Part shown: positions 23,650 through 60,096 of the stretch, in pieces
How the letters are laid out: every line of letters starts with the position of its first letter
Numbering within the stretch: the first letter of the stretch is position 1
Virus record (IMG/VR): IMGVR_UViG_3300027749_002876
Coordinates: 248,001 to 312,000 of that record
DNA: 64,000 nt
Direction: 5' to 3' (one strand)
The notes under the pieces: generated by a model
Told to the model about the DNA's origin: nothing
Database searches by the model: none
What the model saw: only the letters and a program-made list of their open reading frames with translations
Program-made: the position numbers and the translations under genes

Positions 23650-23680
23650 ACTATGTTATCCTTTTGTTTTGTTTGTGAGA

Positions 23681-28361: not shown

Positions 28362-28381
28362 AAAGGCTCTTTCGAGCCTTT
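28362..28381 (-). terminator. intrinsic terminator, AGGCTC/GAGCCT family
   Basis: AAAGGCTC-TTTC-GAGCCTTT hairpin. Confidence 0.7.
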
Positions 28382-28399
28382 GTTTTTGTGGTTGTTTGA

Positions 28400-29341: not shown

Positions 29342-29372
29342 AATATATTATCCTTTTGTTTTGTACTTCATA

Positions 29373-30317: not shown

Positions 30318-30352
30318 AATATATCTCCTTTAATGTATTTATCAGAAAAGAA

Positions 30353-30375
30353 AAAAGGCTCAAAAAGAGCCTTTT
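30353..30375 (-). terminator. intrinsic terminator, AGGCTC/GAGCCT family
   Basis: identical hairpin to 27321-27342. Confidence 0.75.
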
Positions 30376-30392
30376 ATAGTAGCATATATTGA

Positions 30393-31292: not shown

Positions 31293-31384
31293 AAATTTCC
31301 TTTTTATATAAAAATAACTCAATAAGTATATAGCGTTTCTACTAGTACTGTCAATACTAATATTTTACGTAGGTGTGATTAGGA

Positions 31385-40502: not shown

Positions 40503-40528
40503 AGAATAGGCTCCGAAGAGCCTATTCT
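40503..40528 (-). terminator. terminator of tmRNA locus, AGGCTC/GAGCCT family
   Basis: AGAATAGGCTC-TTCG-GAGCCTATTCT on minus strand plus T-run. Confidence 0.8.
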
Positions 40529-40529
40529 G

Positions 40530-40870
40530 CTATTTTCTGTTACGAGGGATAACTCCCCTAGCTGCCTTTATCAGGCCGCAATGCTAAACTGTGAGTCGTT
40601 TGCGGTTACTTTTTTTGCTTCTACGACCGGGTTGCCCCAATCCTACGGCTTCTGCTTTGCCGAGCTGTCCACTCTGTTACTTGTTGCCCTGTCGAAACTT
40701 TTCAGGCCCATCATAAAAAGAATATTAAAAAAACCAAAATAATAACACTCAATATTCCACATGTATATTGATATTTTACTTCAGGATCCATATTGTCTCC
40801 TTATGGTGGACCTGGGGAGATTCGCACTCCCGTCCAGAACACCTTTCCCGTTACTTCATACAGCAATAAC
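40530..40870 (-). ncRNA. ssrA: circularly permuted (two-piece) tmRNA
   Basis: Acceptor piece ends GACGGGAGTGCGAATCTCCCCAGGTCCACCA (3' end 40804). Coding piece starts GGGCCTGAAAAGTTTCGAC (40709). Acceptor stem GGGCCTG/CAGGTCC has G3:U70. Tag frame 40603-40568 reads ANDSQFSIAA then TGA TAA. Outer ends approximate. Confidence 0.92.
40711..40791 (-). CDS. 26-aa hydrophobic peptide encoded in the tmRNA intervening segment
   Basis: TAAGGAG-5nt-ATG; MDPEVKYQYTCGILSVIILVFLIFFL; ends 1 nt before the coding-piece 5' G. Confidence 0.6.
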   Translation of the reverse strand: MDPEVKYQYTCGILSVIILVFLIFFL

Positions 40871-40871
40871 T

Positions 40872-45301: not shown

Positions 45302-46396
45302 ATGCCTAAAAAGCATTTATCAATAACAGGAACACGCATGAGCAGAACACAATTTGAATTTACACCAGGAAAACCAATTAGAACATACGGAGCCAATGGC
45401 TCATGGAGAGATTGGAGCACCGATGAACTTGTGGGGGCAAAATTAAATTATCTATCAGGTTGGAAATGTGGTGCAGGCGTTGATAGCTTATTCATCGATA
45501 TGGATGGTGGTGTATGGACAGCTAGTTGTCGTGTAGGTGGCAAATTAGGTAGTGTTTGGGATGACTTTTCAGTTCCGGAAGATTGGATTGATTGTACTAA
45601 AAATGTATGTAGTTGCGGTGCTGACTTGTTTATCCCAAAAACTAGTCTTGTTGAATTCAAGCCATTACTACGAAAAGGACAAGAATTGCCAACTCAGGGT
45701 GAAATGTTAAATGAACAACTAACTGAGTTTGTAGGTATGGAACGAACACACGCTAGTACTCAAAAACAAATATATTGGGAAATAGGTCGTAGATGTAATT
45801 ATGATTGTAGTTATTGCTGGCCTTGGATACATAACAATACTGACCCACACAAGCCATTGGAAGATTTAATGAGAGCTACTCATTTGATTGAGAAAAAATT
45901 CACCAAAGGTGAAAGCGTTAACTTCATTATTAGTGGTGGTGAACCCACTGTTAATAAAGATTTCTTAGATTGGTTACGTTATTTAAATGCATGCGGACAT
46001 CATGTGAGCTTGCATAGTAATGGTAGTCGATTGCCTGACTATTACAAAGAAGTTATACATTACGGTGATTTGAACTTGAGTGTTCATTATGAGTTCTATA
46101 ACAGAGAAAAGTTTGTTAAAGTGGTTGAGGCTATTGCAAAAGAAAAATCAGAACACGGTGGTTGTGGTCACTTAGAAGTTAAGTTTATGATGGCTCCGCA
46201 CAACCGTGATGAGACATTGAGCTTAGAAGCTGAATTAAAAGAATTACCTCACTTTGTAGATTACTGCACCTGGGCTATTGTTCCTATACGAGGAGACATG
46301 AATAACAAAATCAGTTCACCTGATACCGGTTCAGGCAGTGAAGTTATGGAAGGCTACACTAAGGAAGATTACATTTTATTCGGAGATCGTAAATAA
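45302..46396 (+). CDS. radical SAM enzyme with N-terminal SPASM-like domain
   Basis: CNYDCSYC, SGGEPT, SNGSR; N-terminal WKC...C...CTKNVCSC. Confidence 0.9.
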   Translation: MPKKHLSITGTRMSRTQFEFTPGKPIRTYGANGSWRDWSTDELVGAKLNYLSGWKCGAGVDSLFIDMDGGVWTASCRVGGKLGSVWDDFSVPEDWIDCTKNVCSCGADLFIPKTSLVEFKPLLRKGQELPTQGEMLNEQLTEFVGMERTHASTQKQIYWEIGRRCNYDCSYCWPWIHNNTDPHKPLEDLMRATHLIEKKFTKGESVNFIISGGEPTVNKDFLDWLRYLNACGHHVSLHSNGSRLPDYYKEVIHYGDLNLSVHYEFYNREKFVKVVEAIAKEKSEHGGCGHLEVKFMMAPHNRDETLSLEAELKELPHFVDYCTWAIVPIRGDMNNKISSPDTGSGSEVMEGYTKEDYILFGDRK

Positions 46397-46397
46397 T

Positions 46398-48320
46398 ATG
46401 GAAAAAGACGAATGGATGGTAGAAACGTTAATACCAAGAAACACCGGTATACGCAAGAAGCCTAACATACAAGCTGTAACATATTTTAATGCTACTAGAA
46501 AAACTAAATTAGTACTAGCTGTAATGGGGTGCTGGGCTATTTGGATGCCACCATATAACTTAGGAAGACTAGCTTCATTAACTAGATCATCCGGATATGC
46601 AACAAAATGTTTTGATTTCAATGTTCAAAGTTATCACGACTTTAGAGAAATGTATCCTGGTTCTGATTTAGAGGATGCTTGGGGTACAGGTAATTGGTGG
46701 TGGTGGAAAGAACGTTATTTTGACAAAATACATGAAAGAAACATTCCACTACTAGAAAAATATGTGGATGAAATATTAGCAGAAGATCCGGATATTGTAG
46801 GATTAAGTTTATACTTTACTAACAGATTGCCGTCAGAGTGGGTAGCTAATGAAATTAAAAGACGTAGACCAAGTGTACTAATTATATTTGGTGGACCTGA
46901 ATGCCATTCAGAAGATTACGTTCCGCCCGAATCGGTCGACCACTGGTTTACGGGAGAATCTGAACAATTACTATTAGATTTTTTAGAGAAATACGAAACG
47001 GGTGAGAAGATTACTGAACGTCATTTGGGCAGTTTATATAGTTCTACTAGAATTGATATTGATAGTTTACCCTTCCCCGACTATTCTGATTTTGACTTTT
47101 CTAAGTATTTAGGACATTTATCAATTAATACTGAAATCAGCAGAGGGTGTATTGCTAAATGTAGCTTTTGTTCCGAAACATATTATTGGAAATATAGAGA
47201 TAGAGAAGCACATTCAATATTAGATGAGATAGAGCACCAAGTAAAAACCAACGAAATTGTTGCTGTTTCATTTGTTGATAGTTTAGTCAATGGCAATCTA
47301 AAAAGTCTCAAAGGTTTTGCTGAAGGATTAATTGATCGTAAATTAAACATTAGATGGTGGGGATATGCCAGATGTGATGGACGTATGGATGGTGCTTACT
47401 TTGATTTGCTTCGTGCTAGCGGTTGTGACGGATTCAGTTACGGAGTAGAAAGCGGTAGCCAAAAAGTATTAGACTTAATGCAGAAAAAAGTTAAAGTATC
47501 TGATATTAATGAAAATCTATATCATTCAGGTAGAGTGGGAATGACAGCTAATGCTAATTGGATTATCGGTGCGCCCGGAGAAGATATTGAGGCATTAGCG
47601 CATAGTATGAACCTTATTTGGAATCATAGAAATAATATACATTCAATTAGTCCAGGCAATGGTTTAGGTGACACGTTGGGTACTGACTATGATAATAGAG
47701 AAAAATACAACATAAACCCTCGTAACAAACCTTTCTTAGGACATTGGTACTCATTAGACTGGACTAATACTCAATTAAACAGATACATTAGAATGAAACT
47801 ATTTGTTATTCTTTTAAAGATAGCAAAAGATCATGGAGTGATTGTTAATCTTAATGGTGACAAAGGTATAACCTCACATTACGATTTAAAATTTGATGAT
47901 GACAATTATATTGTTGATAATATTGAATATGAGAATTTTGAATACCATCTATTAAAAACTGGTTACGGTTTTTTTGCTGACACCGTTGTGAATGAAGTAT
48001 TTTCTTTGTTCAGAATATTGTGGAGAATTAAAGGTGGTTTTGAAATTACGCTAAACTTTGAGCAAGAGGTTGATGTTGAGGCATTTGGTGGATTATTAAC
48101 TCATACACCACATACTTATAATGCAACACATTATTTCAAAATAGATAAAGAGGGTAATTTTCAATCTAATAATACATATGAGTTTTTTTATGAACCAGAA
48201 TCTTGGGATAGAATTGAGAATAAGAGTTTTAAATATGAAGGTAATGTTTCAGGTTATTGGGGTGAAGTAAAGATTGCTCCTGTGAAACGTCACATATGGA
48301 TAGAGAACAATATAAATTAA
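46398..48320 (+). CDS. cobalamin-binding (class B-type) radical SAM enzyme
   Basis: PPYNLGRL, DIVGLS, IIFGGPE, GESE, LPFPDY, SRGCIAKCSFC, GVESGSQKVL; start moved to MEKDEW (GGAG RBS). Confidence 0.9.
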   Translation: MEKDEWMVETLIPRNTGIRKKPNIQAVTYFNATRKTKLVLAVMGCWAIWMPPYNLGRLASLTRSSGYATKCFDFNVQSYHDFREMYPGSDLEDAWGTGNWWWWKERYFDKIHERNIPLLEKYVDEILAEDPDIVGLSLYFTNRLPSEWVANEIKRRRPSVLIIFGGPECHSEDYVPPESVDHWFTGESEQLLLDFLEKYETGEKITERHLGSLYSSTRIDIDSLPFPDYSDFDFSKYLGHLSINTEISRGCIAKCSFCSETYYWKYRDREAHSILDEIEHQVKTNEIVAVSFVDSLVNGNLKSLKGFAEGLIDRKLNIRWWGYARCDGRMDGAYFDLLRASGCDGFSYGVESGSQKVLDLMQKKVKVSDINENLYHSGRVGMTANANWIIGAPGEDIEALAHSMNLIWNHRNNIHSISPGNGLGDTLGTDYDNREKYNINPRNKPFLGHWYSLDWTNTQLNRYIRMKLFVILLKIAKDHGVIVNLNGDKGITSHYDLKFDDDNYIVDNIEYENFEYHLLKTGYGFFADTVVNEVFSLFRILWRIKGGFEITLNFEQEVDVEAFGGLLTHTPHTYNATHYFKIDKEGNFQSNNTYEFFYEPESWDRIENKSFKYEGNVSGYWGEVKIAPVKRHIWIENNIN

Positions 48321-48330
48321 GGTATATTAA

Positions 48331-49716
48331 ATGAATAACACTAAAACGTTTTGCAACATGGCATGGGATTATCCTATGTTCTTTATGTTTAAAAATGCAG
48401 TAGGTTACTGCTGTAGAACACCTAGAATAGATATTGATAATGAATTACTAGAGGAGATGAAAGAGGACTTTTGGTCTAATCATCCTAGCTTTGTCAATAG
48501 AAGAAAAGAATTAATCAATGGTATAAAAAGTAAAGATTGTGATACCTGTTGGCAATTAGAAGATGCTGGATTTAAAAGCTCTAGGAATGATGACCACTTC
48601 AATATGTTTATGAAGAAAAATTATCCCAATTTTAATGAAAAATTAGACCAGCGTTTATTTAAATTCTTTCCAGGCATTGAACGTAGTAACTATTCAAATG
48701 TAATTGAAATTGTATTGAATAACACATGTGATGCAAAATGTACATATTGTAGTGAACATTATAGTACTCAATGGGTAACTGAAAAAAAGAAGTTTGGTGG
48801 AATAAGTCCGTATTATACTGACATGAATGACAGAAATCCTAGAGCAGAAGAACTGTTCTGGTCATGGTATGAAAACAAAGTATTACATACTAATAAACGT
48901 TTTGGATTCATTGGTGGTGAACCGTTAATTATTGATGCATTATATGAATGTTTTGATAAATTAATTGAAATACATGAAAGAAAACAACTATCAATTCAGT
49001 CTGATGCGGATAAAATGGAACTATGTATTACTAGTAATATGAATACACCTCCTGCATATTTTGAAAAGTTTATGGGGTATGTGAAAAAACTAGAAAAACA
49101 TTTCAGAATTATCATTCAAGTAAGCGGTGAAAACGTAGGTGACGATTTAGAATATATACGACACGGTGTTAAATGGAAACGTTGGTCTAGAAATGTTGAA
49201 TATTTATTAGACAATACTAACATTACGCTAAACTTTTTACCATGCTTAAGCTTGTTAACTATTCCTAGATTTAACGAATACATACAATATGTAAACAAGT
49301 TAAACAAAAAATACGGAGTAATGAAAATACATCAAAACATTGTTACATGGCCAGTAGAACAAAGTCCTATGATAGCTCCTAAAGAATTTTCCCAGTACTT
49401 TGATCCATGCATTGACAGTGTGAATGAAATTCTTGCCGGAGAAATTAAGGATCGATTTATACGAGGTGAATATGAAAACCTATTATTGTGGCTTACAAAA
49501 ACACGTGAAGCTATTATAAGCAATCCAAGTGCAAGTGAACCTGTTGAGAATGCTAAAAAGTTTTATTCTTTTTTTAATGAGTTAGATCGTAGAAGAAATA
49601 CTAGTGTATTGAAAATATTTCCTGAAATAAAAGAATTTTATGACACAGGTAAACAGTTATATGAAGGCACAGTACAACCACGCATTATACCAATTGTAGC
49701 TGTGACAAATGAATAA
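48331..49716 (+). CDS. radical SAM enzyme with N-terminal twitch-like Cys domain
   Basis: FC...YCC...CDTCW; CDAKCTYC; IGGEPL. Confidence 0.88.
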   Translation: MNNTKTFCNMAWDYPMFFMFKNAVGYCCRTPRIDIDNELLEEMKEDFWSNHPSFVNRRKELINGIKSKDCDTCWQLEDAGFKSSRNDDHFNMFMKKNYPNFNEKLDQRLFKFFPGIERSNYSNVIEIVLNNTCDAKCTYCSEHYSTQWVTEKKKFGGISPYYTDMNDRNPRAEELFWSWYENKVLHTNKRFGFIGGEPLIIDALYECFDKLIEIHERKQLSIQSDADKMELCITSNMNTPPAYFEKFMGYVKKLEKHFRIIIQVSGENVGDDLEYIRHGVKWKRWSRNVEYLLDNTNITLNFLPCLSLLTIPRFNEYIQYVNKLNKKYGVMKIHQNIVTWPVEQSPMIAPKEFSQYFDPCIDSVNEILAGEIKDRFIRGEYENLLLWLTKTREAIISNPSASEPVENAKKFYSFFNELDRRRNTSVLKIFPEIKEFYDTGKQLYEGTVQPRIIPIVAVTNE

Positions 49717-50938
49717 CAATTTACCAAATAGTGCAACATTGTGTACACAATTATGGAATCATGCTGTTGTTGATATAGATAAGAAAAAAATCAGAGCATG
49801 TTGTAAAACTCCTTCTATACAATTAACAGATAATGATATTGCTACATACAAGCAAGATGCTTTTATTAATTTACCAGTAATACGTGAAGCAAGAAAAGAA
49901 ATGCTTGACGGTGAGAAGCCAGCTATGTGCCGCACCTGCTGGGATTTAGAAGCCAAAGGAAATTTTAGTTTTAGAACTGGGAATTTTGCTTGGCAAAACT
50001 ATTTTAAAGATTTAAATTACAGTGATTATACATTATCAAATCATCCAAATGATTTAGATATACAGTTGGATAACTATTGTGATTTAAAGTGTTTATATTG
50101 CAATGAAGAATTTAGTAGCCAATGGCAAGCAGAGAAACAAAAGTTTGGTGATATACAGTCTTTTATCCCTATACAAACAGCACATGATGACTTTGTTAAA
50201 ATTTTCTTTACATGGTTTAACACAGTAAAAGATAACTTTGAACGTATTGCTTTTTTAGGCGGGGAGCCATTAATCAGTCCTCGTTTCTATGAGTTACTTG
50301 ATATGATTCTTGAAGCGTACAATAATAAATTCCCCGATGAATTGGTGATTAATATCATAACTAATCTGAATACTACATCAAAATACTTAGAAAAATTTAT
50401 TGACACTATCAATCGTTATAAAGATAAAGTTAAGTTTAACATAAACATTTCACAAGAAGCATATGGGCAGCAAGCTGAAGCTATTAGACATGGTTTAGAT
50501 TTTAACAGATTTATGTTTAATTTTAATGAGTTAGCCAAAATTAAAGGGATTGTATTAAGCACTATAACTACTGTCAATGTATTGAGCCTAAGTACATTGT
50601 ATAAGTATTTAAAATTTGTGACTGAGATTGAAAAAGAACACAATGTTCACGTTATCATTTATCCAAACTTAGTGAGCTTTCCAGAACATTTACAAGTTTC
50701 ATTAATGGATAAACAGTTGGGTAAAGAATATATTGATTTGGCTATTGAAGCTTTATCCGAAAAAAATCACCAGGGGTACATTGACTTCTTAAATACATTA
50801 TACGATAAGTTTGTCTTTGAAGAAATCAGAGATACAGATAACCACAATTCTCTTATAAAAGAACTAGAAACTCTGTCTGTTAGACGAAACGTAAATTATA
50901 AGGAAATATTTAATGAGTACAAATACATCTGGGGATAA
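49709..50938 (+). CDS. radical SAM enzyme with N-terminal twitch-like Cys domain
   Basis: LC...ACC...CRTCW; CDLKCLYC; LGGEPL. Confidence 0.88.
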   Translation: MNNNLPNSATLCTQLWNHAVVDIDKKKIRACCKTPSIQLTDNDIATYKQDAFINLPVIREARKEMLDGEKPAMCRTCWDLEAKGNFSFRTGNFAWQNYFKDLNYSDYTLSNHPNDLDIQLDNYCDLKCLYCNEEFSSQWQAEKQKFGDIQSFIPIQTAHDDFVKIFFTWFNTVKDNFERIAFLGGEPLISPRFYELLDMILEAYNNKFPDELVINIITNLNTTSKYLEKFIDTINRYKDKVKFNINISQEAYGQQAEAIRHGLDFNRFMFNFNELAKIKGIVLSTITTVNVLSLSTLYKYLKFVTEIEKEHNVHVIIYPNLVSFPEHLQVSLMDKQLGKEYIDLAIEALSEKNHQGYIDFLNTLYDKFVFEEIRDTDNHNSLIKELETLSVRRNVNYKEIFNEYKYIWG

Positions 50939-52508
50939 CTCAGTTTGGGATTCACTGACACATGAACATGCTGAGTCAGGAAAAGTGTACAACGAAACAC
51001 TCGAGGTTATAACACCACCATTACAAAACTACATGGATGAACCTACCTTCCCTGCACAAGTTGATCCAGCTAACGTATCTTGTAAATTCAAATGGGATTA
51101 TCCTATTGTTAACTTGATGAGCGGTCATAGTAGAACATGTTGCCGTGTACCAAAACAAGTTATAACTCAACAAGACCTTGATATGTATGGCATAGATGCT
51201 ATTCAAAATTTACCATACGAACAAGATAGACGTAGAGAAAAGATTTTAGGTATTACACATGTTGATTGTGAATCTTGTGTAAGATTAGAATGGAATGGTG
51301 CTATTAGCCCTCGTAGTAATATGCAAGGGTTTGTTAATGAGTGGTTAATTACCCATCATAATGCATATCCACATAAAGTAAAAAATGTACAGAAATGGCA
51401 CGTTGACCATATGCCAACAAATGCCAATGACTTACCCTTCAATCATCCATTACTAAGAGCAGATCATCCTGATATGTTAGAAATTATCTTGGGTAATCAT
51501 TGTGATTTGAAATGTACATATTGTAGTATTCATTACAGCACTCAATGGCAAACTGAATTAATTAAGTTTGGTGATATCAAAAAAGAAGATATTGACCATC
51601 ATTTTCCGGCAGCGCCTGAAAAATTAGAACCTGTATTCTGGGAATGGTTCTATGATGTTGGTCGTCATTCTAGTAAAGTTATTAACATTCTAGGTGGCGA
51701 GCCTACATATATGCCAAAGTTTTATGATGTTATGGAAAAGTTAACAGCGGCTTACAAAGACTTAGGTAAGAAAGATAGACATGTTGAATTAGGTATATTA
51801 TCTAACATGAACACTAAACAACCACAAATGGATCGTTTTTTAAATCTATTACCTGAACTTACTAAGTATCTATTTTTAAGATTACAACCTAGCATTGAAG
51901 CTGTTGGTAAGAAAGCAGAATATATTAGATATGGTTTAGATTGGAATCGATTTGAAGGTAACATCAAAAGAATATTAGGAGAACGATCTAAGTATGGATT
52001 AACTCCTGACAACTTTGGCATGGGATTTCAAATGGCTTTGAATAGCTTTAGTATTTCAAGTTTACCAGACTTTATTCATTGGTCTAATGAATTGATTAAT
52101 GAGTTTGACTTTGAAATTGGATTGATGAAAAATGTGGTTAGTTTTCCTAGACACCATAATCCACACGTACTTACTCCTGACTTTGGTACTTACCTTGAAC
52201 AAGCACGTGATTATATTGAAATATATGCCGAGCGCAATGATAGACAAATCAGAAGATTATCAGCATTGCATCATGGTGTCCCCCCTCATGGTAGTTGGGT
52301 GAGCTATAATGTAGATTTATTAAACAGTTTAGTAGATTCTGTCAGTAGTGATTATCGCAGTGAATATGATGTTGAAAGCCGTGGCCATTGGTATCATTTT
52401 GTAGAATCTATGAAGCATAGAAGAAATATTGATGTATTAGAATATTATCCTGAAATGACAGAATTTTATAATTTGTGCAAGAAACATGCACAACATGGTG
52501 ATAAATAA
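50913..52508 (+). CDS. radical SAM enzyme with N-terminal twitch-like Cys domain
   Basis: SC...TCC...CESC; CDLKCTYC; LGGEPT. Confidence 0.88.
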   Translation: MSTNTSGDNSVWDSLTHEHAESGKVYNETLEVITPPLQNYMDEPTFPAQVDPANVSCKFKWDYPIVNLMSGHSRTCCRVPKQVITQQDLDMYGIDAIQNLPYEQDRRREKILGITHVDCESCVRLEWNGAISPRSNMQGFVNEWLITHHNAYPHKVKNVQKWHVDHMPTNANDLPFNHPLLRADHPDMLEIILGNHCDLKCTYCSIHYSTQWQTELIKFGDIKKEDIDHHFPAAPEKLEPVFWEWFYDVGRHSSKVINILGGEPTYMPKFYDVMEKLTAAYKDLGKKDRHVELGILSNMNTKQPQMDRFLNLLPELTKYLFLRLQPSIEAVGKKAEYIRYGLDWNRFEGNIKRILGERSKYGLTPDNFGMGFQMALNSFSISSLPDFIHWSNELINEFDFEIGLMKNVVSFPRHHNPHVLTPDFGTYLEQARDYIEIYAERNDRQIRRLSALHHGVPPHGSWVSYNVDLLNSLVDSVSSDYRSEYDVESRGHWYHFVESMKHRRNIDVLEYYPEMTEFYNLCKKHAQHGDK

Positions 52509-52512
52509 AAAA

Positions 52513-53187
52513 ATGAATATTACATTTACGTTAGATCCAAACAATAGATCGATATACTATATCAATTTAGAAGTAAGCCCTGAAATACTCGAAGAACTCA
52601 AGCAGGAAAATTGGGTACCTATTACTCCTACTCATTTAGATGAATATTATACAAAACGTCATCGTCTAGATGATGGATACGGAATAAAAGGTTTATTAGT
52701 ACGTAAAGTATACACTTTTATGAGGTCTTCTGAATTTAAAAAAACTATGTTAGACTTGATATGGAAAGATATGACATTTCAACATAAATGGGGTCCTCGT
52801 CTTAACTATGAAAAAATTAACAATTGTACCATTGTTGAATTTGGTTTTGATAAAGATTGTCCTGGATTTAGTACAGACCTTCATTTAGAAAATCGTTGTC
52901 AAATTGCATTTGGTAAGATTTTTTTTGTACCTGAGGATGCGGAAAATAAAAGCTCATATTTTTATAGAACAATAAATCGTGATGATCCTTTAAGAGTCCC
53001 TGTAGGTATGGGACTAGGTTGGCTATGTGTCAATACACATGAAGGTTGGCATGAAGGTTATAACGCTAGTGAGGAAGATAGATATTCATCTAGTATAAAT
53101 TTTACATTTGATATATTTAACAACGGCCATGTAAAAAGCGATGACGCCACTATTAAATATATACGTGGCGAAGCTGCTTCTATTTAA
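52513..53187 (+). CDS. 2OG-Fe(II) oxygenase-like protein
   Basis: DCPGFSTDLHLE, NTHEGWHEG, R-Y-S distal motif; start moved to MNITF after GATAAATA (52500-52507). Confidence 0.55.
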   Translation: MNITFTLDPNNRSIYYINLEVSPEILEELKQENWVPITPTHLDEYYTKRHRLDDGYGIKGLLVRKVYTFMRSSEFKKTMLDLIWKDMTFQHKWGPRLNYEKINNCTIVEFGFDKDCPGFSTDLHLENRCQIAFGKIFFVPEDAENKSSYFYRTINRDDPLRVPVGMGLGWLCVNTHEGWHEGYNASEEDRYSSSINFTFDIFNNGHVKSDDATIKYIRGEAASI

Positions 53188-54371
53188 TAATTTATTAATT
53201 TCCATAATTCAGGCAAATAGTCTTTCATATCTGTTTGTCTATAGTCATCGTGTAATTTTAAAAAGTTAATTAACTTAATTCTATATTCTTCTGCATTAGA
53301 ATATTCATATCCATCATCATTTGGTAGATTAATGAAATTAATGATAAATTCTTTGTGACCGGTGTCAGGAGATTTTAAATTATACTTACTAAAATCTATC
53401 TTATCTATTTTTTCTACTAATTTATTTTTTAATCTTGATGGTAAGTTTTTAAGACATAACATTTGTGGATCATGTATTAGATTTGCAAACATAATAAAAC
53501 AACCATACTTACTTAATTCATCTAATATTTCTTCTAAGTTTAAAATATTTAAAATACTAGCAGTTGGATAAATACCAACAAAGAAAGGGTGTGGTAATAC
53601 AGCATATTTTTTGATGTTATCATCTATTTTATTCCATTTTGCTGGCCAACGTTGATATTCAAATCTAGTACCAATATCATCTATACTCAAAAACAAATTT
53701 ATTCTTTTAAATTGTTTAAGTAATTCTATTAGTTCATCAGTATATACTGTACCATTTGTATTCAGTGTTAAACTAATATTTTTAGCTAAATTTTTATCTA
53801 CTAAAAATTTAATGTAATCCAATACTTCATCATTGATTAATGGTTCACCGCCGTATATTAATAGATATTCAAGATTGACTGACATATCATGCAATGCTTG
53901 TAATCGTTCACCTTCAAATTTATCTAATGATACCGTTTCATAGTAATCAGCTGGTATCAACGGTATATTTAATTTATTAAATTGTGTTTGCCATAAACTA
54001 CTTAGATAAGGACTACATATGCGACAAGCCAAATTACATTTATTAGATAGTTTTAAACTAAGGTAATTTACAACAGGCTTATCAATTCTATACCTGTTGT
54101 TATATTGATTTTGTTGACGTAAACTAAAAACTCCGGCTTCTTCTTCAGTCCAACATCTTATACATTCTTCTGGTTTCTCCCCTGCTAAGAATTTCTTTCG
54201 TAATGTATTAACATCTTCACTATTCCAAATAGTATCTAATCTATCTTCAAGTATATTATACATCCCGATCTGATCGGGTTTTTTAATTACTTTACGTATT
54301 TTACAGCATACTTGACATGAGCCTTCTGGACTTATTTCCAAACTGTTAAAGGGCATTGAACAAAAACTCAT
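53184..54371 (-). CDS. twitch-domain radical SAM enzyme
   Basis: FCSMPF..VCC..CIRCW; CNLACRIC; YGGEPL; NTNGT. Confidence 0.9.
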   Translation of the reverse strand: MSFCSMPFNSLEISPEGSCQVCCKIRKVIKKPDQIGMYNILEDRLDTIWNSEDVNTLRKKFLAGEKPEECIRCWTEEEAGVFSLRQQNQYNNRYRIDKPVVNYLSLKLSNKCNLACRICSPYLSSLWQTQFNKLNIPLIPADYYETVSLDKFEGERLQALHDMSVNLEYLLIYGGEPLINDEVLDYIKFLVDKNLAKNISLTLNTNGTVYTDELIELLKQFKRINLFLSIDDIGTRFEYQRWPAKWNKIDDNIKKYAVLPHPFFVGIYPTASILNILNLEEILDELSKYGCFIMFANLIHDPQMLCLKNLPSRLKNKLVEKIDKIDFSKYNLKSPDTGHKEFIINFINLPNDDGYEYSNAEEYRIKLINFLKLHDDYRQTDMKDYLPELWKLINY

Positions 54372-55594
54372 TCTAATAAACCTTTCAGTTCAGGGAACAA
54401 TTCAATTGTATTTTCTTTTCTAATACCATCTAATAATTTAGTTTCTATTTTTAAATTATCAATTTCAGTTTGTGTATCGTCTGAATACATATACTTTATA
54501 ACCTTATGTATTTCATTTATAGTAACATCAGTAAGAGTATATGATTCACATTTTTTAGCATATTCTAGCCAATGCTGTTCTACTAATTCTTTTTTATCTT
54601 TAGGTAAAGATGTAAGATTGTACATTACTGGGTCTGTTAGTATGTTATAATAGATGTTATCAATATGAATTATACCTTCATCAGCTAAAAACAAATGCAT
54701 TTTAGGTAAATGAAACGCATTCAATATGCTAATGGTAGGACATAATTGTAAATAGATATCTGGACAATTTTGTTTAATTGTTCTTAGATTAGATAAGATA
54801 TTATCCCATGTACTGCCATTGCGTATGATGCTGGCTTGTTCCCAACCAGCATCTAAACTTAGTGATAGTCGGACTTTCTTAAATAAATTCCAATAATCAG
54901 TTACCACATTTTTATCTTTAAATGTTAGGCGTGTACAATTTGTATTGTAACGCAATACCAAATCAAATTTCTTATGCTCAACTAGAATATCTAATATTTC
55001 GTAATGTTCTGCCAATAGTAATGGCTCTCCACCACAAAAATATATTTCTTCAATACTATCTAAATTGTTTTTGAAAAACTCAAAAAAATCATTCTTTTCA
55101 TCAAACGCTTTTTGCAATACAGGAACTTTTCTTTTCAAACTAGATACTGTTTCTTCTGCTATGCTACTACTATTGATATGGTCACATGTTCTGCATTTTA
55201 AATTACAGAGATTACTAAATCTTACGTCCCATGTGGCTATTTTATTTCCAACAAGATTGTTATTTTCATCAAATTCTAGTTTTTTAAATGCATCACCATA
55301 ATTTCTGTTACTAAACCATCTATAACTATGAGCACCATATGTTTGTTCAGGCAATGAACAACGATTACAGGACTCTGGTAATTTAGGTCCATTAATCATT
55401 TGTTGTTGCATTTCTGTTAGTTTGACATTAGAATTAGAATATATGTCAGACATTTTTTGAGTTTTTGTATCACCTAATATATAATTTTGATTGATACAAC
55501 ATGGGATGGCTCTTCCGTCTGTCCAAACACAAGCATGAATAAAAGGAAGAACACAAAAATGGTTAGAATTAAGTAAATGTTCTTTATCAATCAT
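54368..55594 (-). CDS. twitch-domain radical SAM enzyme
   Basis: FCVLPF..PCC..CNRC; CNLKCRTC; CGGEPL. Confidence 0.9.
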   Translation of the reverse strand: MIDKEHLLNSNHFCVLPFIHACVWTDGRAIPCCINQNYILGDTKTQKMSDIYSNSNVKLTEMQQQMINGPKLPESCNRCSLPEQTYGAHSYRWFSNRNYGDAFKKLEFDENNNLVGNKIATWDVRFSNLCNLKCRTCDHINSSSIAEETVSSLKRKVPVLQKAFDEKNDFFEFFKNNLDSIEEIYFCGGEPLLLAEHYEILDILVEHKKFDLVLRYNTNCTRLTFKDKNVVTDYWNLFKKVRLSLSLDAGWEQASIIRNGSTWDNILSNLRTIKQNCPDIYLQLCPTISILNAFHLPKMHLFLADEGIIHIDNIYYNILTDPVMYNLTSLPKDKKELVEQHWLEYAKKCESYTLTDVTINEIHKVIKYMYSDDTQTEIDNLKIETKLLDGIRKENTIELFPELKGLLE

Positions 55595-56307
55595 GTTGGT
55601 TGTTTGCTTATTAAAATATTTATATAGTCTTGTACTTCTTTGGCATTCTCTATCATTTCATAAGGGTTATCGGGTAATTGTTTTTCTAAACGAATATTAG
55701 TAATAATTGGAATTAAAAAATATCTAGTCAAATCATAAACAGCACGTTCATATCTTACAGTAAAGGTAGTATCCAGTTTATATTCCATAATTAATTTATC
55801 AAAATTTATAATTCTATTGTATAACCATGACATATTTGGAAAAAGTTTGGTAGGTATATGAATAGGATTATCATGTGTGCCGTGAAGTGAATTCCATTTA
55901 TTAGTAGAAAGACCAAATACATAACTTACCAAGTGATTTTCTATATTTTCTCTTTTTATAATTAGAAATTTAAAATTTAATGCATGTAGCTCATTTAATA
56001 TCTTTGTTGTAAAAGGTATATTATCTTCAGTTAAAAATAATTTTATTACCAATGATTGATCTTGATTACCAGTTTTTAAAAGGTTAAGTACATAATCAAT
56101 CTGCACTTCATGGGAATCGTATTTTGTAAAATCAGAAGGTATTGCACGTAATAAACGATTGTCATATTGTTCTATACAATAGGGATGTCCAACCGTAAAA
56201 GGCTCTGCTAAATTTTTCATGCCTGATCCTATTGATCTAGCTATCAATTCTGAAACATACTGACTACCAGATCTGGGTAGACCTATCAGACAAATTCTAG
56301 TAGTCAT
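55591..56307 (-). CDS. sulfotransferase-like protein
   Basis: GLPRSGS PAPS-binding loop, EPF, KREN...VS, VRYE. Confidence 0.7.
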   Translation of the reverse strand: MTTRICLIGLPRSGSQYVSELIARSIGSGMKNLAEPFTVGHPYCIEQYDNRLLRAIPSDFTKYDSHEVQIDYVLNLLKTGNQDQSLVIKLFLTEDNIPFTTKILNELHALNFKFLIIKRENIENHLVSYVFGLSTNKWNSLHGTHDNPIHIPTKLFPNMSWLYNRIINFDKLIMEYKLDTTFTVRYERAVYDLTRYFLIPIITNIRLEKQLPDNPYEMIENAKEVQDYINILISKQPT

Positions 56308-57254
56308 GCTACCTTTGTACTCATTATGTCAAAATTGCAATGGCACATTGTTTTATCACATAGTATTGGATCTTTTGGTACTTCAAAATTCTCAAAAATA
56401 TTCCCAATCTTGTCACCCACTCTACACCATCCTCTATATACATCACCTCTTAGGTCCACAATGATTTGCTCTACACCTGCATAACATTTCCAGCCACTCC
56501 AGTCATTTGTTTTTTGGCTAATAAATCTATGTGCGCTTGATACAATCTCAGTACCATCTTCTTGTACCATCTTCATTGCACCACGATAATAATCAAATGA
56601 TTTGGTGTACTTAATATGTTTAACAATCAATTCATGTTGTTTATCAAATATCTTTTTCTGAAACTCATCGTAGTCATACAATGTATCACCAAAGTCATGT
56701 ATCAATGGTTGTAATGCCATACTGATATTACCTATACCTTTAACTTTGTTTGCTATAGCATAACAAAAGTCAAATTTTTCAGGACTCATCATAATGTTAA
56801 CATGAGTTCTAACATCATTATTGATTAATTTAACTACTTGAACAAAGTGGTCAGCATCAGCAAACTCAGGATGAAAACTTAAACATACGTGGTCAAAGTA
56901 TTGTTTGTTATCTTCCCACCAACGTAACGTTCTACTACCATTACTGATTAATCCAACTTTAGCTCCCAACTCAGTGCAATGTTTGCATATCTCTATAAAA
57001 TGTTTGTATAATGTTACTTCACCACCAGTTAATTCAAAATAAACTTTACGCGGAGCAACTTGTTCTACTACACGTGAAATAAATTCTTTAACTAAATCAA
57101 TTTCAGGCCATTTAATACTACCTGAGTGTAAATTATCCGGACAATAACTACATTCAAAATTACAAGTGTTGCCTAAACACCAGTTAACTACAAACCATTC
57201 TTCATGCTCCGGAGTACTATGTGCTAATTTAATATATTTGTGTTCCATTACCAT
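56304..57254 (-). CDS. radical SAM enzyme with C-terminal SPASM-like domain
   Basis: CNFECSYC, TGGEVT, SNGSR; C-terminal WKC...WC...CDKTMCHC. Confidence 0.9.
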   Translation of the reverse strand: MVMEHKYIKLAHSTPEHEEWFVVNWCLGNTCNFECSYCPDNLHSGSIKWPEIDLVKEFISRVVEQVAPRKVYFELTGGEVTLYKHFIEICKHCTELGAKVGLISNGSRTLRWWEDNKQYFDHVCLSFHPEFADADHFVQVVKLINNDVRTHVNIMMSPEKFDFCYAIANKVKGIGNISMALQPLIHDFGDTLYDYDEFQKKIFDKQHELIVKHIKYTKSFDYYRGAMKMVQEDGTEIVSSAHRFISQKTNDWSGWKCYAGVEQIIVDLRGDVYRGWCRVGDKIGNIFENFEVPKDPILCDKTMCHCNFDIMSTKVA

Positions 57255-58201
57255 CCTTCTATTTTTCTAATAACATCCATCTCTTTAACTAACGGACCGA
57301 TGTTATATTTATCAGCTAGATAATGTCGTTTGAAGAACTTGCTTTGTTCTACATCATGCATACACATTGGTAAACCTAACTTATCATGCAATGCTTCACC
57401 TAACAAGTTTGCTTCTTTTTGTGGATCTCTATGTGAGTGTTCTTCCCATAATACAGTATAGTTATCAAACCATTGTACGTTGGCAGGATCCCATTCAGTT
57501 AACATAGTCATGTATGTGCCTAATCGTGCACCATAGATAGCCCACTCACCGTTCTCTACATCACGACCGATGTTGTGCCAAATTGTTAAGTTGTTTAAAT
57601 TACGACTAGCAACAGTTTCTTTAAATTCATCAATCGTAGGTCTTGCACCACGATTTAAACTCATCTTAACACCTTCACGAAAACCTGCACGCCAAGCTTG
57701 AAAGGGTGTATGATTGGGATATGTTGTACTGTAACAATCATACATAGACCAATATAAGTTATCCTTACTATCTAAGCAAAAGTCAGCAATACGTGATACA
57801 TCTCCATCTTTCTGATTCTCATGTGTTTGCATATTCATTACATAAGTCTTTGTCCAACTACTCATGCCACCATTACCATAACGTAGTCCATTGATACTAT
57901 TAGTTGCCTTCCAACGATATTGTGCTAAATGATAACTAGGGTCTTTATTGGTGAAATCAAATTGCATGTTGAAGAACCTTTCTTCAGGCATATTATCACC
58001 GTCAATTAAAATAAAACGTTCAGTGTCACTTGCCATTGCAGCCGCTTTATGCGCGGCATCACTACCTTTTATATTATCTACTCGTTTAGCCCAAGGAACC
58101 ATGTTCTTAATCTTAAGCCAAAATTCTTCTTTCTGCGGCTCGTCATAACTAAGATAGATGCAATCTAAATCGGCTACATCAATGATATCATTCGAGTTCA
58201 T
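57248..58201 (-). CDS. glycosyltransferase-like protein (GT-A)
   Basis: YLSYDEP, AHKAAA, ILIDGD (DxD), NGLRYGNGG, AWRAGFRE. Confidence 0.65.
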   Translation of the reverse strand: MNSNDIIDVADLDCIYLSYDEPQKEEFWLKIKNMVPWAKRVDNIKGSDAAHKAAAMASDTERFILIDGDNMPEERFFNMQFDFTNKDPSYHLAQYRWKATNSINGLRYGNGGMSSWTKTYVMNMQTHENQKDGDVSRIADFCLDSKDNLYWSMYDCYSTTYPNHTPFQAWRAGFREGVKMSLNRGARPTIDEFKETVASRNLNNLTIWHNIGRDVENGEWAIYGARLGTYMTMLTEWDPANVQWFDNYTVLWEEHSHRDPQKEANLLGEALHDKLGLPMCMHDVEQSKFFKRHYLADKYNIGPLVKEMDVIRKIEGW

Positions 58202-58547
58202 ATATGTTTAATTTCCATTTTGTTGTTTTACCGTCATATGAGCTATCAGCTATAATGCTTATATCTTCTGCAATGCAATCTACCCCATCATCACTATTGG
58301 GCATTAACTTATATACAACTGATTTAGGACCAGCTGTTGATAGTCTACCATCAATAACTCTTATGTCTGGTCTTGCGGCAGCAAAAGTTTGTGCATCAAT
58401 TACAATGTAATTGCCAGTCATTGATTTATCACCGGTATAACATACTACCGCCCCGTTTTCATCATAATATAATCTAAATTCGGGTGGTTCCATTTTAGGT
58501 TGTTCCCATATAACTATATATTCTACTTGGGTATTTTCTATGCTCAT
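58188..58547 (-). CDS. hypothetical protein
   Basis: 119 aa, coupled in operon. Confidence 0.65.
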   Translation of the reverse strand: MSIENTQVEYIVIWEQPKMEPPEFRLYYDENGAVVCYTGDKSMTGNYIVIDAQTFAAARPDIRVIDGRLSTAGPKSVVYKLMPNSDDGVDCIAEDISIIADSSYDGKTTKWKLNIYELE

Positions 58548-59299
58548 TTCATACTTTCTAATATTTTATCACTAAAATTCTTTATATGATAGTGAAAAGG
58601 ATATCGTTGTGGGACAGTTTGAATTCTAATATGATCCGGTAAACATTCATATACAAATGTATCAGTCCAATTTTCAGTTGGTGTTTCATTAATATATTGT
58701 TTCATATGCACCATTGACATATCAGTAAACGTTGGCATCATAGTGTTTTCCACACCCATAATATGACAAGCAATAGCGTATGCCCAATCAGTTGTTGCTA
58801 ACTCTTGTGCATTGCATCTTAATGACGATTTGTAATGTACCCAATTTTCAAACACATCTCTTACAATAGCAAAAAATTGTTTTGCAGTATCAGATTTTTT
58901 AAAATATGTAATTGCATTATATGCATCAGGTAAATTATTATCATCTATAAATCTACGATATACTCTATTGTCTGATATGTCTTGTTTGTAATTTCTAATT
59001 ATACTTGATACTACTATGTCTCTATGTGATAACACATCCCACCAATAGTCAATGTTTTTAGGAATGTACATATCTGCTTCTAGTTTAATTGTATACTCGT
59101 ATGGACTAGCATCATATACTTGCCAATCATTTTGTAATTTCCAATTAGTGTCAGGTGCTTGATCACCATATGGCAACATGTCTGTAGTTACTATAGTTAC
59201 ATTAGCATTGGGCATTACTCTTTTAATACTTTTTTCTAACACATTAGCACATTTAACATAGTCATCACCTTGCGCCATAATCACAAAGCCTTTGTTCAT
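58544..59299 (-). CDS. glycosyltransferase-like protein (GT-A)
   Basis: KGFVIMA, YDASPYEYTIKLEADM, TTDWAY. Confidence 0.65.
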   Translation of the reverse strand: MNKGFVIMAQGDDYVKCANVLEKSIKRVMPNANVTIVTTDMLPYGDQAPDTNWKLQNDWQVYDASPYEYTIKLEADMYIPKNIDYWWDVLSHRDIVVSSIIRNYKQDISDNRVYRRFIDDNNLPDAYNAITYFKKSDTAKQFFAIVRDVFENWVHYKSSLRCNAQELATTDWAYAIACHIMGVENTMMPTFTDMSMVHMKQYINETPTENWTDTFVYECLPDHIRIQTVPQRYPFHYHIKNFSDKILESMK

Positions 59300-60096
59300 A
59301 CTAACTCCATAAAGTTTTCTTTATTCATAACGTGGCAGTCCATATCTTTAACAATAATATATTCTTTACGAATTTTTCCTCGTTGCCAATTATCAAACAT
59401 CACCGTATATTCAGTATTAAAACTATCATCACTATTTTTATAAACCATAGTATTCTTGCCTATGTGAACTAAATTCCAAGGAATTAAATCTTCTACTGAA
59501 AGAGTATTGCCATTAGTAATACGTGTTGCAAGAGTGATAGCATAGTCATTGCGATAAGGGGAAGGAATAAATCCATGTAAATTTGCATAATGTTCATAAT
59601 TACGTTGAACCATACCCATTGAGTTAAATATCTGTTCTGCTCGTTTAGTTTTATTAAATCTAATAACTGTGGCCCATAATGTTTTAAATCCATATGGATT
59701 TAACATCTCTATTTGGGGGGTATTATACATTAGGAAATGTGTATCTTCGTGACAACAAAAATCAGTAGGTAACTCAAATGTCTTTAACAGTTTAGTTGAA
59801 TTAACTAAGTAGTCTGTATCTATTAATAATGTTTCATCATATGGAGTTAATTCAAATACCCGATATCTACCCTTATTAATCCATGTTTCTCGATCTCGTT
59901 TGTTACTTGTATCCGCAGTAGCGATAATAGTATTATCAAACACATAATCAATATTTTCAGGTATGGAAGTAGTATCTGTTATAATTGATACCGGTAAGTT
60001 TAAAAAGTGATTAATGCGTTTAGCTGTTGCAACAGCCATATCATAGTAGTTGAATTTAGTAGAGTTAAACGCAAATAGTATTACACCTTTGCTCAT
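59296..60096 (-). CDS. glycosyltransferase-like protein (GT-A)
   Basis: KGVILFA, ELTPYDETLLIDTDYL (DxD), YRNDYA; paralog of neighbour. Confidence 0.7.
   Translation of the reverse strand: MSKGVILFAFNSTKFNYYDMAVATAKRINHFLNLPVSIITDTTSIPENIDYVFDNTIIATADTSNKRDRETWINKGRYRVFELTPYDETLLIDTDYLVNSTKLLKTFELPTDFCCHEDTHFLMYNTPQIEMLNPYGFKTLWATVIRFNKTKRAEQIFNSMGMVQRNYEHYANLHGFIPSPYRNDYAITLATRITNGNTLSVEDLIPWNLVHIGKNTMVYKNSDDSFNTEYTVMFDNWQRGKIRKEYIIVKDMDCHVMNKENFMELV

What the first reader, a model, noticed from the sequence alone, without database searches (positions are those of the whole stretch)
45302..57254. Two radical SAM paralogs are domain permutations of each other
Seen: the 56304 protein is core then Cys domain (GWKCYAGVEQIIVDLRGDVYRGWCRVGDKIGNIFENFEVPKDPILCDKTMCHCNFD). 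The 45302 protein has the homologous Cys domain first (GWKCGAGVDSLFIDMDGGVWTASCRVGGKLGSVWDDFSVPEDWIDCTKNVCSCGAD) followed by a related core (W..G..CN..CSYC, GGE.T, SNGSR, LS.H.EF, MM.P). Known: SPASM/twitch domains are normally C-terminal. Inference: natural permutation, possibly acting as a heterodimer or in sequential steps.
Basis: seen in the sequence. Interest (0 to 1): 0.6.

Follow-up and report, generated by a model that had tools for sequence, protein, structure and literature searches.

The report
Circularly permuted radical SAM enzyme pair
A giant phage encodes two related iron-sulfur "radical SAM" enzymes built from the same two modules joined in opposite order, and this natural circular permutation is old, widespread in phages and predatory bacteria, and shows that the small cysteine-rich module is a movable part.

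Summary
The 45302 protein (P1) and the 56304 protein (P2) are significantly similar only in swapped order. P1 residues 18-118 match P2 216-316 (Cys module, profile E 1e-20). P1 141-364 match P2 5-207 (radical SAM core, E 3e-19). A linker of about 22 residues is new in P1. P2 has the canonical order and its model aligns end to end with twitch-type enzymes (BlsE Z 16.9, SkfB, BtrN), so P1 is the derived permutant.

Both are conserved families with intact CxxxCxxC motifs and five conserved Cys in the small module. Core and Cys-module trees agree, which fits one old event. The same family also holds split genes (core and Cys module separate, cut at the same site) and about 650-aa tandem doublets.

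The P2-then-P1 gene pair recurs in many viral contigs and in Bdellovibrionota chromosomes, next to N-terminal-twitch radical SAM genes (NF033640, five in this window) and glycosyltransferases.

"Twitch is always C-terminal" is therefore overstated. The heterodimer idea got no verdict, and some genomes carry P1 without P2. The likeliest role is separate, successive steps in sugar or glycan tailoring; this is inferred. I class it as a new variant of a known kind.

The parts
45302..46396 (+). P1-type radical SAM gene (P0001, 364 aa; probable true start M13 at 45338): Cys module, then linker, then core
   Evidence: ORF. Pfam Radical_SAM at residues 160-274, E 8e-16. 288 homologs, the best 120 at 67-90% identity and about 95% coverage, 347-355 aa long.
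45353..45655 (+). N-terminal Cys (twitch-like) module of P0001, residues 18-118; conserved C56, C76, C98, C103, C105
   Evidence: Aligns to P0002 216-316; profile E 1e-20.
45656..45721 (+). Linker of about 22 residues (119-140), specific to P1, joining what were the C- and N-termini of the canonical form
   Evidence: No counterpart in P0002 in the rotated alignment and the profile comparison.
45722..46393 (+). Radical SAM core of P0001 (residues 141-364), a (beta/alpha)6 partial barrel; CxxxCxxC at 45794-45817
   Evidence: Aligns to P0002 5-207. Secondary structure of the model, core pLDDT mostly 60-90.
56304..57254 (-). P2-type radical SAM gene (P0002, 316 aa): canonical order, core then Cys module
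   Evidence: ORF. 646 homologs, the best 120 at 68-96% identity over the full length. Model pLDDT 73, pTM 0.77. Aligns with BlsE at Z 16.9 over model residues 18-316.
56634..57242 (-). Radical SAM core of P0002 (residues 5-207); CxxxCxxC at 57141-57164
   Evidence: Pfam Radical_SAM at residues 27-127.
56307..56609 (-). C-terminal Cys (twitch-like) module of P0002, residues 216-316; conserved C257, C277, C299, C304, C306
   Evidence: Structural alignments to twitch/SPASM enzymes run to the C-terminus.
46338..48320 (+). B12-binding radical SAM gene (the listed ORF starts at a GTG inside P0001's end; an ATG at 46398 is the likelier start). First gene of the variable cassette between P1 and P2
   Evidence: Pfam B12-binding plus Radical_SAM; NCBIfam PhpK/RiPP C-methyltransferase-like matches below cutoff.
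48331..52508 (+). Three N-terminal-twitch radical SAM genes (48331-49716, 49709-50938, 50913-52508)
   Evidence: NF033640 N_Twi_rSAM scores of 229, 234 and 183 bits against a cutoff of 170.
53184..55594 (-). Two N-terminal-twitch radical SAM genes (53184-54371, 54368-55594)
   Evidence: NF033640 scores of 301 and 317 bits. Pfam SPASM at residues 4-74 and 14-79, ahead of Radical_SAM.
55591..56307 (-). 238-aa gene of unknown function directly downstream of P2 on the minus strand
   Evidence: No Pfam, NCBIfam or PHROG hit.
57248..60096 (-). Conserved neighbours of P2: a 317-aa GT2-like protein (57248-58201), a 119-aa protein (58188-58547), and 251-aa and 266-aa GT-A-like proteins (58544-59299, 59296-60096)
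   Evidence: These families co-occur with the pair in all four viral clades. Atlas feature hits: 'Glycosyltransferase 2-like' and Nucleotid_trans/Glyco_transf_8 clusters. These are leads only.

Best explanation
P0001 is a genuine, ancient circular permutant of the canonical twitch-type radical SAM enzyme represented by P0002. Shown: the enzyme consists of two modules. One is a core of about 200 residues, a partial (beta/alpha)6 barrel with the CxxxCxxC motif. The other is a Cys module of about 100 residues with five conserved cysteines. In P2 the Cys module follows the core, as in BlsE, BtrN and SkfB. In P1 the same module precedes the core, tied to it by a new linker of about 22 residues, and P1's new termini fall at the old core/Cys junction. 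The Cys module behaves as an independent evolutionary unit: the same family contains core-Cys, Cys-core, separate core and Cys genes cut at the same site, and core-Cys-core-Cys doublets. Inferred: the CxxxCxxC motif binds the SAM-cleaving [4Fe-4S] cluster and the Cys module binds an auxiliary iron-sulfur cluster. P1 probably arose once, from a tandem fused duplicate that lost its first core and last Cys module. In P1 the N-terminal module probably folds back onto the same face of the barrel to cap the active site. Both enzymes are active. They most likely act as separate enzymes on successive steps in tailoring a sugar, sugar nucleotide or glycan that the neighbouring glycosyltransferases then handle.
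For: Permutation: searches give the residue mapping P0001 18-118 to P0002 216-316 and P0001 141-364 to P0002 5-207. P1's C-terminal tail aligns to P2 170-207 (E 6e-6).

Canonical order of P2: its model aligns colinearly with BlsE (Z 16.9, 270 residues), SkfB (15.7), PqqE (14.8), MoaA, anSME and BtrN (11.6), in each case through to the C-terminus. The two models show the same order of secondary-structure elements in the Cys module: hairpin, helix, hairpin.

Real genes: hundreds of intact full-length homologs of each, and catalytic Cys and GGE motifs conserved in both.

Old, single event: in the core tree the P2 cores form one clade (support 100) and 57 of 60 P1 cores form one clade (93). The Cys-module tree is congruent: P2 100, P1 87, with the same subclades.

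Module autonomy and intermediates: a Cys-module profile finds 1234 cluster representatives. Among the top 150 there are 87 core-Cys, 14-15 Cys-core and 9-10 doublets. In doublet P0258 the two halves are 24% identical (E 1e-21) and the second core lacks CxxxCxxC; in P0382 both cores are intact. Split genes occur in L078, L079, L080 and L084, cut at the permutation site, with an unrelated gene inserted between the halves in L078.

Linkage: P2-then-P1 tandem with overlapping stop and start in 14 viral loci, and convergent P1/P2 flanking 0-6 N_Twi genes in 26 loci. The tandem pair is also found in Bdellovibrionota chromosomes.

Sugar link: P0253 is a P1-type enzyme fused to GT2 domains and is preceded by a P2-type gene. 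GT2 genes sit beside P1 in bacterial loci. The phage neighbours are GT-like. The nearest solved structure, BlsE, acts on a sugar nucleoside (its function is from my own knowledge).
Against: The P0001 model is unusable for residues 1-154 (pLDDT below 50), so the claim that the N-terminal module docks on the same face as in P2 is not shown. Pfam's SPASM model does not hit the Cys module even at E 10, so 'twitch' rests on a predicted structure and the Cys pattern. Cluster binding is untested. Three P1 cores (L078, L080, L084) and the split cores fall outside the main P1 clade in an unresolved polytomy, so a second origin or a fission-fusion route is not excluded. The substrate is unknown, and twitch/SPASM enzymes are more often peptide maturases. 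The phage GT assignments are feature-based leads without Pfam support.
Confidence: 0.6

Rival explanations
1. P1 and P2 form an obligate heterodimer. The opposite module orders (core-Cys next to Cys-core) bring the two Cys modules and their clusters together at an interface, making one two-site machine.
For: The tandem P2-then-P1 arrangement is conserved across divergent phages and Bdellovibrionota, with overlapping stop and start codons. The two families co-diversify in congruent subclades.
Against: complex prediction gave no verdict, which is not evidence either way. No P2-P1 (core-Cys-Cys-core) fusion was seen among the top 150 representatives. Viral clade C contigs show P1 with 8-10 kb on both sides and no P2. 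Genomes G009 and G010 have P1 but no colinear P2 match, and in G007 the two lie about 100 kb apart. MAGs and contigs may be incomplete.
Confidence: 0.13
2. The permuted order arose by gene fission and re-fusion, or by boundary shifts in an array of core and Cys genes, and not by duplication, fusion and truncation. It may have happened more than once.
For: Split core and Cys genes exist, cut at exactly the permutation site. Other fusions place the Cys module ahead of other things: P0323 is Cys+SPASM+core, and L134 is N_Twi-Cys-core. The P1 genes of L078, L080 and L084 lie outside the main P1 clade.
Against: P1 retains counterparts of both original termini of P2 around a short linker (P2 residues 5-28 and 300-316), as expected from head-to-tail fusion of two full genes. 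Doublets, the intermediate the duplication model predicts, exist in the family. One origin is not rejected by either tree.
Confidence: 0.3
3. The pair, together with the N_Twi enzymes, matures a peptide or protein. This could be a RiPP-like product, a glycosylated peptide, or a virion protein, and not a free sugar.
For: Most characterised SPASM/twitch enzymes are peptide maturases. The sequence hits to solved structures are SkfB and YydG/EpeE. GT2 enzymes also make glycopeptides (own knowledge). The cluster lies beside large repeat proteins and tail-fibre-like genes.
Against: No precursor-like small gene was identified, and no RiPP recognition element or peptidase/transporter genes were detected. 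The best structural match is a sugar-nucleoside enzyme. A direct P1-GT2 fusion exists.
Confidence: 0.25
4. P0001 is an annotation or assembly artefact, or a decaying chimera: the tail of one truncated P2-like gene fused to the head of the next.
For: None beyond the architecture itself.
Against: The same architecture and length occur in at least 288 protein clusters and 354 viral stretches. All motifs are conserved, with 67-90% identity and no stops. It also occurs in bacterial chromosomes of up to 1.74 Mb.
Confidence: 0.01
5. P0001 is simply a divergent member of the known N-terminal-twitch family NF033640, so the permutation is the one already catalogued.
For: It shares the twitch-before-core order. 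NF033640 matches P0001's core weakly (30 bits). The C..G..C hairpin aligns with the N_Twi twitch domain.
Against: The score is 30 bits against a cutoff of 170, and the match covers only the core. P1's Cys module against the N_Twi N-terminus gives E 0.16, against E 1e-20 with P2's C-terminal module. N_Twi cores are a very distant outgroup in the core tree. Pfam SPASM hits the N_Twi modules but not P1's.
Confidence: 0.04

Closest known systems
Twitch-domain radical SAM enzymes (BlsE 7vob, BtrN 4m7t, SkfB 6efn, MoaA)
   Same: Partial (beta/alpha)6 core with CxxxCxxC and GGE, plus a small Cys-rich hairpin module. The P0002 model aligns over its whole length: BlsE Z 16.9, SkfB 15.7, BtrN 11.6.
   Different: Sequence identity is only 12-16%. 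Pfam SPASM does not recognise the module. In P0001 the module is N-terminal. Substrate and cluster content are unknown.
NCBIfam NF033640 N_Twi_rSAM (twitch domain-containing radical SAM protein, twitch at the N-terminus)
   Same: The auxiliary Cys module precedes the core. Genes of this family sit next to P1 and P2 in the window, in viral loci and in bacterial loci.
   Different: It is a different family. P0001 scores 30 bits against a cutoff of 170, and its Cys module is not significantly similar to the N_Twi module (E 0.16). N_Twi proteins carry an extra helical C-terminal region of about 100 aa, and no canonical-order paralog is evident beside them.
SPASM-domain radical SAM maturases (anSME, PqqE, CteB, SuiB; Pfam PF13186)
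   Same: Same superfamily and overall fold, Z about 13-15.
   Different: SPASM carries seven or more Cys for two auxiliary clusters. This module has five conserved Cys and about 100 residues, which is closer to a one-cluster twitch. There is no PF13186 hit.
Textbook natural circular permutations by duplication and fusion (for example saposin/swaposin and DNA methyltransferase motif orders; from my own knowledge, not tested here)
   Same: The segments are swapped with both ancestral termini retained around a linker, and tandem doublets are present in the same family.
   Different: Here the permuted unit is a whole cofactor-binding module of a radical SAM enzyme. The canonical and permuted paralogs are kept side by side as a conserved gene pair.

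Membership tests
Radical SAM superfamily (PF04055) | Pfam model above its gathering score | tested here: met
   P0001 scores 59.1 bits and P0002 43.9 bits against a cutoff of 29.5.
Radical SAM superfamily (PF04055) | CxxxCxxC cluster motif and GGE SAM-binding motif | tested here: met
   C165/C169/C172 with SGGEP in P0001, and C31/C35/C38 with TGGEV in P0002. These are invariant across both families.
Twitch/SPASM subclass | Cys-rich hairpin module packed after the core, shown by structural similarity through the C-terminus | tested here: met
   Met for P0002, on a predicted model only: BlsE Z 16.9 (model 18-316), SkfB 15.7 (14-316), BtrN 11.6 (18-314). For P0001 the module could not be modelled (pLDDT below 50).
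Twitch/SPASM subclass | Match to Pfam SPASM (PF13186) | tested here: not met
   None of the 22 Cys-module sequences gives a hit, even at E 10. Neither whole protein gives a hit at E 0.01.
Twitch/SPASM subclass | Auxiliary [4Fe-4S] cluster bound by the module's cysteines | not testable with these tools
   Five conserved Cys are present. Iron-sulfur content needs biochemistry.
NF033640 N_Twi_rSAM | Score above the curated cutoff (170 bits) over the full length | tested here: not met
   P0001 scores 30 bits (core only, residues 153-253) and P0002 21 bits. The five neighbouring genes score 183-317 bits.
Circular permutation (relationship between P0001 and P0002) | Two significant colinear segments in swapped order that together cover nearly the whole of both proteins | tested here: met
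   The score rises from 170 to 319 on rotation, and only about 22 linker residues and about 8 junction residues are unmatched.
Circular permutation by duplication | Tandem fused duplicates (the predicted intermediate) exist in the family | tested here: met
   There are 9-10 doublets of about 650 aa among the top 150 representatives. P0258's halves match at E 1e-21. That they are ancestral to P1 is not shown.
Viperin family (NF038283) and STM4011 family (NF038073) | Score above the curated cutoff | tested here: not met
   P0002 scores 60.0 bits (cutoff 180) and 58.8 bits (cutoff 200). P0001 scores 47.6 and 26.9 bits.

The most novel reading that the evidence does not exclude
The canonical and permuted paralogs are kept as a pair because they assemble head to head (core-Cys with Cys-core). 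Their two auxiliary-cluster modules would then meet and form a shared electron path or substrate channel. This would be a two-site radical SAM machine, with the permutation selected for that geometry, making an unusual sugar for phage or predator surface glycans.
Probability: 0.12. Interest if true: 0.75.

Novelty: new variant of a known kind. Interest (0 to 1): 0.55.

Why it matters
This gives radical SAM enzymology a natural experiment. The same auxiliary-cluster module is found after the core, before the core, as a separate gene, and in doublets, all within one alignable family. That argues the twitch-type module is an autonomous, dockable unit, and it offers matched pairs for testing how module connectivity affects cluster assembly and catalysis. 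It also marks a conserved module of many radical SAM genes plus glycosyltransferases, not characterised in the literature searched here, shared by huge phages and Bdellovibrionota. Its chemistry is unknown. It is not a new kind of system: N-terminal twitch architectures are already curated, and circular permutation is a known evolutionary route.

Tried and rejected
1. Structure superposition of P0001 on P0002 was not possible.
2. Heterodimer prediction (A6 plus A5 alignments) gave a score of 0.25 against a mark of 0.32. This is no verdict and is not counted for or against binding.
3. The Pfam SPASM model was tried on the Cys module at E 10 and gave no hit.
4. Megablast of the region against the phage collection found no match. 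tblastn of P0001 found only a weak core hit in Erwinia phage pEa_SNUABM_33.
5. 'Cys-only' representatives as evidence for free-standing modules: the one traced (P0262) is a contig-end fragment of a P2-type gene followed by a P1-type gene. That class is therefore not counted. Only the split genes inside long contigs (L078, L079, L080, L084) are counted.
6. hhalign of whole-family profiles reports only the core segment, so the halves had to be compared separately.
7. Literature searches for circular permutation or circularly permuted with radical SAM/SPASM, and for twitch with phage or glycosyltransferase, found nothing on this architecture. The library does not cover all journals.
8. Pfam, PHROGs and NCBIfam gave no annotation for the non-rSAM neighbours.
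Full report
**Setting.** The window is bases 70903-134902 of a 170,963-bp IMG/VR virus record that CheckV rates 45% complete. A 524,565-bp viral contig carries an identical copy of the P0001 gene (L006). The window encodes a phage-type large terminase (phrog_36964, E 4e-105) and an HNH endonuclease. It therefore belongs to a very large phage.

**The observation.** ORF 45302-46396 (+) gives P0001 (364 aa) and ORF 56304-57254 (-) gives P0002 (316 aa). BLASTP finds two significant segments in swapped order:
- P0001 3-115 with P0002 205-316 (E 7e-19).
- P0001 157-341 with P0002 23-196 (E 1e-16).

I scored every rotation of P0002 against P0001. The unrotated score is 170. It climbs to a plateau of 310-319 for cuts after residues 165-240, with the best at 196. 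Shuffled sequences average 9 with sd 5. Profiles built from eleven members of each family confirm both halves: Cys module E 1e-20 and core E 3e-19.

With the domain alignment and the profile comparisons of the tails, the map is:
- P0001 18-118 corresponds to P0002 216-316.
- P0001 119-140 is a linker with no counterpart.
- P0001 141-364 corresponds to P0002 5-207.

Both original termini of the canonical form are kept around the linker, and P1's new termini fall in the old core/Cys junction.

**Which order is ancestral?** Both proteins pass Pfam Radical_SAM and keep the CxxxCxxC and GGE motifs. The P0002 model (pLDDT 73, pTM 0.77) aligns colinearly and end to end with twitch/SPASM radical SAM structures:
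- BlsE, Z 16.9 (270 residues, model 18-316).
- SkfB, Z 15.7.
- PqqE, Z 14.8.
- MoaA and anSME, Z about 13.5.
- BtrN, Z 11.6.

P2 is therefore the canonical order and P1 the derived one. The small module has five conserved cysteines. That is too few for a two-cluster SPASM domain, so I call it twitch-like. Pfam's SPASM model does not recognise it even at E 10, and cluster binding is untested. The P0001 model is poor for residues 1-154. The docking of its N-terminal module is therefore inferred, supported only by the same hairpin-helix-hairpin order of predicted elements in both models.

**Are they real genes?** P0001 has 288 homologous clusters. The best 120 are 67-90% identical over about 95% of the length and are 347-355 aa long, which suggests the true start is M13. 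P0002 has 646 clusters, and the best 120 are 68-96% identical over the full length. An artefact or a decaying chimera is excluded.

Between the two genes lie a B12-binding radical SAM gene and five genes that pass NCBIfam NF033640, 'twitch domain-containing radical SAM protein'. This is a curated family whose twitch domain is N-terminal. Two of the five also hit Pfam SPASM at residues 4-79, ahead of Radical_SAM. An N-terminal twitch is therefore already a known architecture.

P0001 is not a member of that family. It scores 30 bits against a cutoff of 170, on the core only. Its Cys module is unrelated at profile level to the N_Twi module (E 0.16) but clearly related to P2's C-terminal module (E 1e-20). 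Two different twitch-first families therefore sit in one locus.

**Family-wide architecture.** A profile of the Cys module alone, searched against 1.84 billion representatives, finds 1234 proteins at E <= 1e-3 and 607 at E <= 1e-10. I classified the top 150 with local HMMs:
- 87 core-Cys.
- 14-15 Cys-core.
- 9-10 doublets of about 650 aa (core-Cys-core-Cys).
- 38 Cys-only.

In doublet P0258 the two halves are 24% identical (E 1e-21) and the second core has lost CxxxCxxC. In P0382 both cores are intact. The one Cys-only entry I traced is a contig-end fragment, so I do not count that class.

Genuine split genes do exist inside long viral contigs. L078, L079, L080 and L084 each carry a P1-type gene, then a core-only gene (226-231 aa), then a Cys-only gene (95-125 aa). 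The cut is at the same junction as the permutation. In L078 an unrelated 210-aa gene lies between the two halves.

Other fusions include Cys+SPASM+core (P0323), N_Twi-Cys-core (L134), and a P1-type enzyme fused to three GT2 domains (P0253). The Cys module is therefore an autonomous unit. The doublets predicted by the duplication-fusion-truncation route are present, although their ancestry to P1 is not shown.

**Age and origin.** In a core tree rooted on N_Twi cores, all 27 P2 cores form one clade (support 100) and 57 of 60 P1 cores form one clade (93). The P1 genes of L078, L080 and L084 and the split cores sit in an unresolved basal polytomy. The Cys-module tree is congruent: P2 100, P1 87, with the same three P1 subclades. 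This fits one old permutation followed by co-diversification. A fission-fusion route or a second origin is not excluded.

**Linkage.** Among 81 viral loci with a P1-type gene:
- 26 have P1 (+) and P2 (-) convergent, with 0-6 N_Twi genes between them. This is the window's arrangement. The two genes are directly adjacent in L004, L005, L046 and L049.
- 14 have P2 immediately upstream of P1 on the same strand, mostly with overlapping stop and start codons.
- 4 have the split form.
- 37 show no P2. Most of these end inside the N_Twi cassette. In clade C, however, 8-10 kb on both sides holds no P2, and the whole (fragmentary) contigs hold none either.

A scan of 185,579 species genomes found P1-type genes almost only in Bdellovibrionota (Bdellovibrionaceae, Pseudobdellovibrionaceae, Bacteriovoracaceae). 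They reach up to 60% identity and lie on contigs of up to 1.74 Mb, usually as a P2-then-P1 tandem beside N_Twi genes. Housekeeping neighbours confirm a chromosomal context. In five such genomes, one has P2 about 100 kb from P1, two have only more distant canonical-order relatives, and two have no colinear P2 match. These are MAGs of unknown completeness. The pair is strongly but not universally linked, which argues against an obligate complex. The complex prediction gave no verdict.

**Function (inferred).** Three independent associations point to carbohydrate chemistry:
- The P1-GT2 fusion, preceded by a P2-type gene and followed by more GT2 genes.
- GT2 genes directly upstream of N_Twi-N_Twi-P1 in bacterial loci.
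- Conserved phage neighbours whose nearest Atlas clusters are GT2-like and GT8/Nucleotid_trans-like. These are leads only.

The nearest solved structure, BlsE, acts on a sugar nucleoside (own knowledge). The highest-scoring NCBIfam partial matches are to viperin and, for P0001, also MoaA, which act on nucleotides, and to NrdG. A peptide or protein substrate remains a serious rival, because most twitch/SPASM enzymes are peptide maturases.

**Verdict.** Its framing as an exception to 'always C-terminal' is weakened by the curated N-terminal-twitch family next door. The heterodimer idea is untested and somewhat disfavoured. It is a new variant of a known kind and of moderate interest.

Noticed in passing
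window 40503-40905 (-): A phage-encoded tmRNA passes the Rfam gathering scores for tmRNA_permuted (98.9 bits) and beta_tmRNA (95.4 bits). ARAGORN also calls a permuted tmRNA with tag peptide ANDSQFSIAA. It abuts, and slightly overlaps, the 3' end of the 1447-aa ORF.
   Followed up: partly
window 48331-55594; loci L006-L085: N-terminal-twitch radical SAM genes (NF033640) form a highly variable cassette. There are five copies in the window and about 200 copies across 65 of the viral loci, with 0-6 between P1 and P2 depending on the contig. This looks like a hot spot of gene gain and loss.
   Followed up: partly
window 40872-45215 (-): A 1447-aa protein carries well over a dozen copies of a unit of about 67 aa bearing an FDFSW(R/H)PDP...IY.WG motif (seen by eye in the translation). 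TRF finds a 201-bp period at 44391-44812. Its C-terminal domain is homologous to the 317-aa GT2-like neighbour of P2 (E 6e-9). It has no Pfam or PHROG hit.
   Followed up: partly
window 21735-24637 and 27363-31322 (-): Seven similar-sized ORFs of about 294-318 aa lie in a region of raised G+C (0.42-0.44). The one pair I compared is 72% identical, and both proteins are built of units of about 60 aa (TNLVSNTGVVATDTTGVGTAR..LAAAGYG..KAIFGYG). Function unknown.
   Followed up: partly
loci L089-L137 (genome contigs): The P2/P1/N_Twi module of this huge phage is otherwise found almost only in Bdellovibrionota chromosomes, at up to 60% identity. This hints at gene exchange with, or a host among, predatory bacteria. 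The scan pattern (RRCN[YF]xC[SGA]YC) may bias the result.
   Followed up: partly
L006 (IMGVR_UViG_3300027749_002876, 524,565 bp): A viral contig of more than half a megabase carries a 100% identical copy of the P0001 gene and the same five N_Twi genes. The window's phage is probably a megaphage, and its record holds only part of the genome.
   Followed up: no
L078 11558-12187 (+): A 210-aa gene with an SGGADSS motif, which resembles a PP-loop ATP pyrophosphatase motif by eye, is inserted between the split core and Cys-module genes.
   Followed up: no
L004/L005 and contig U1NiKAPu: In relatives where P1 and P2 are adjacent, an Asp/Arg beta-hydroxylase-family gene (PF05118) lies directly upstream of P1, and a collagen-repeat protein lies nearby. 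I did not check whether the window has that hydroxylase gene.
   Followed up: no
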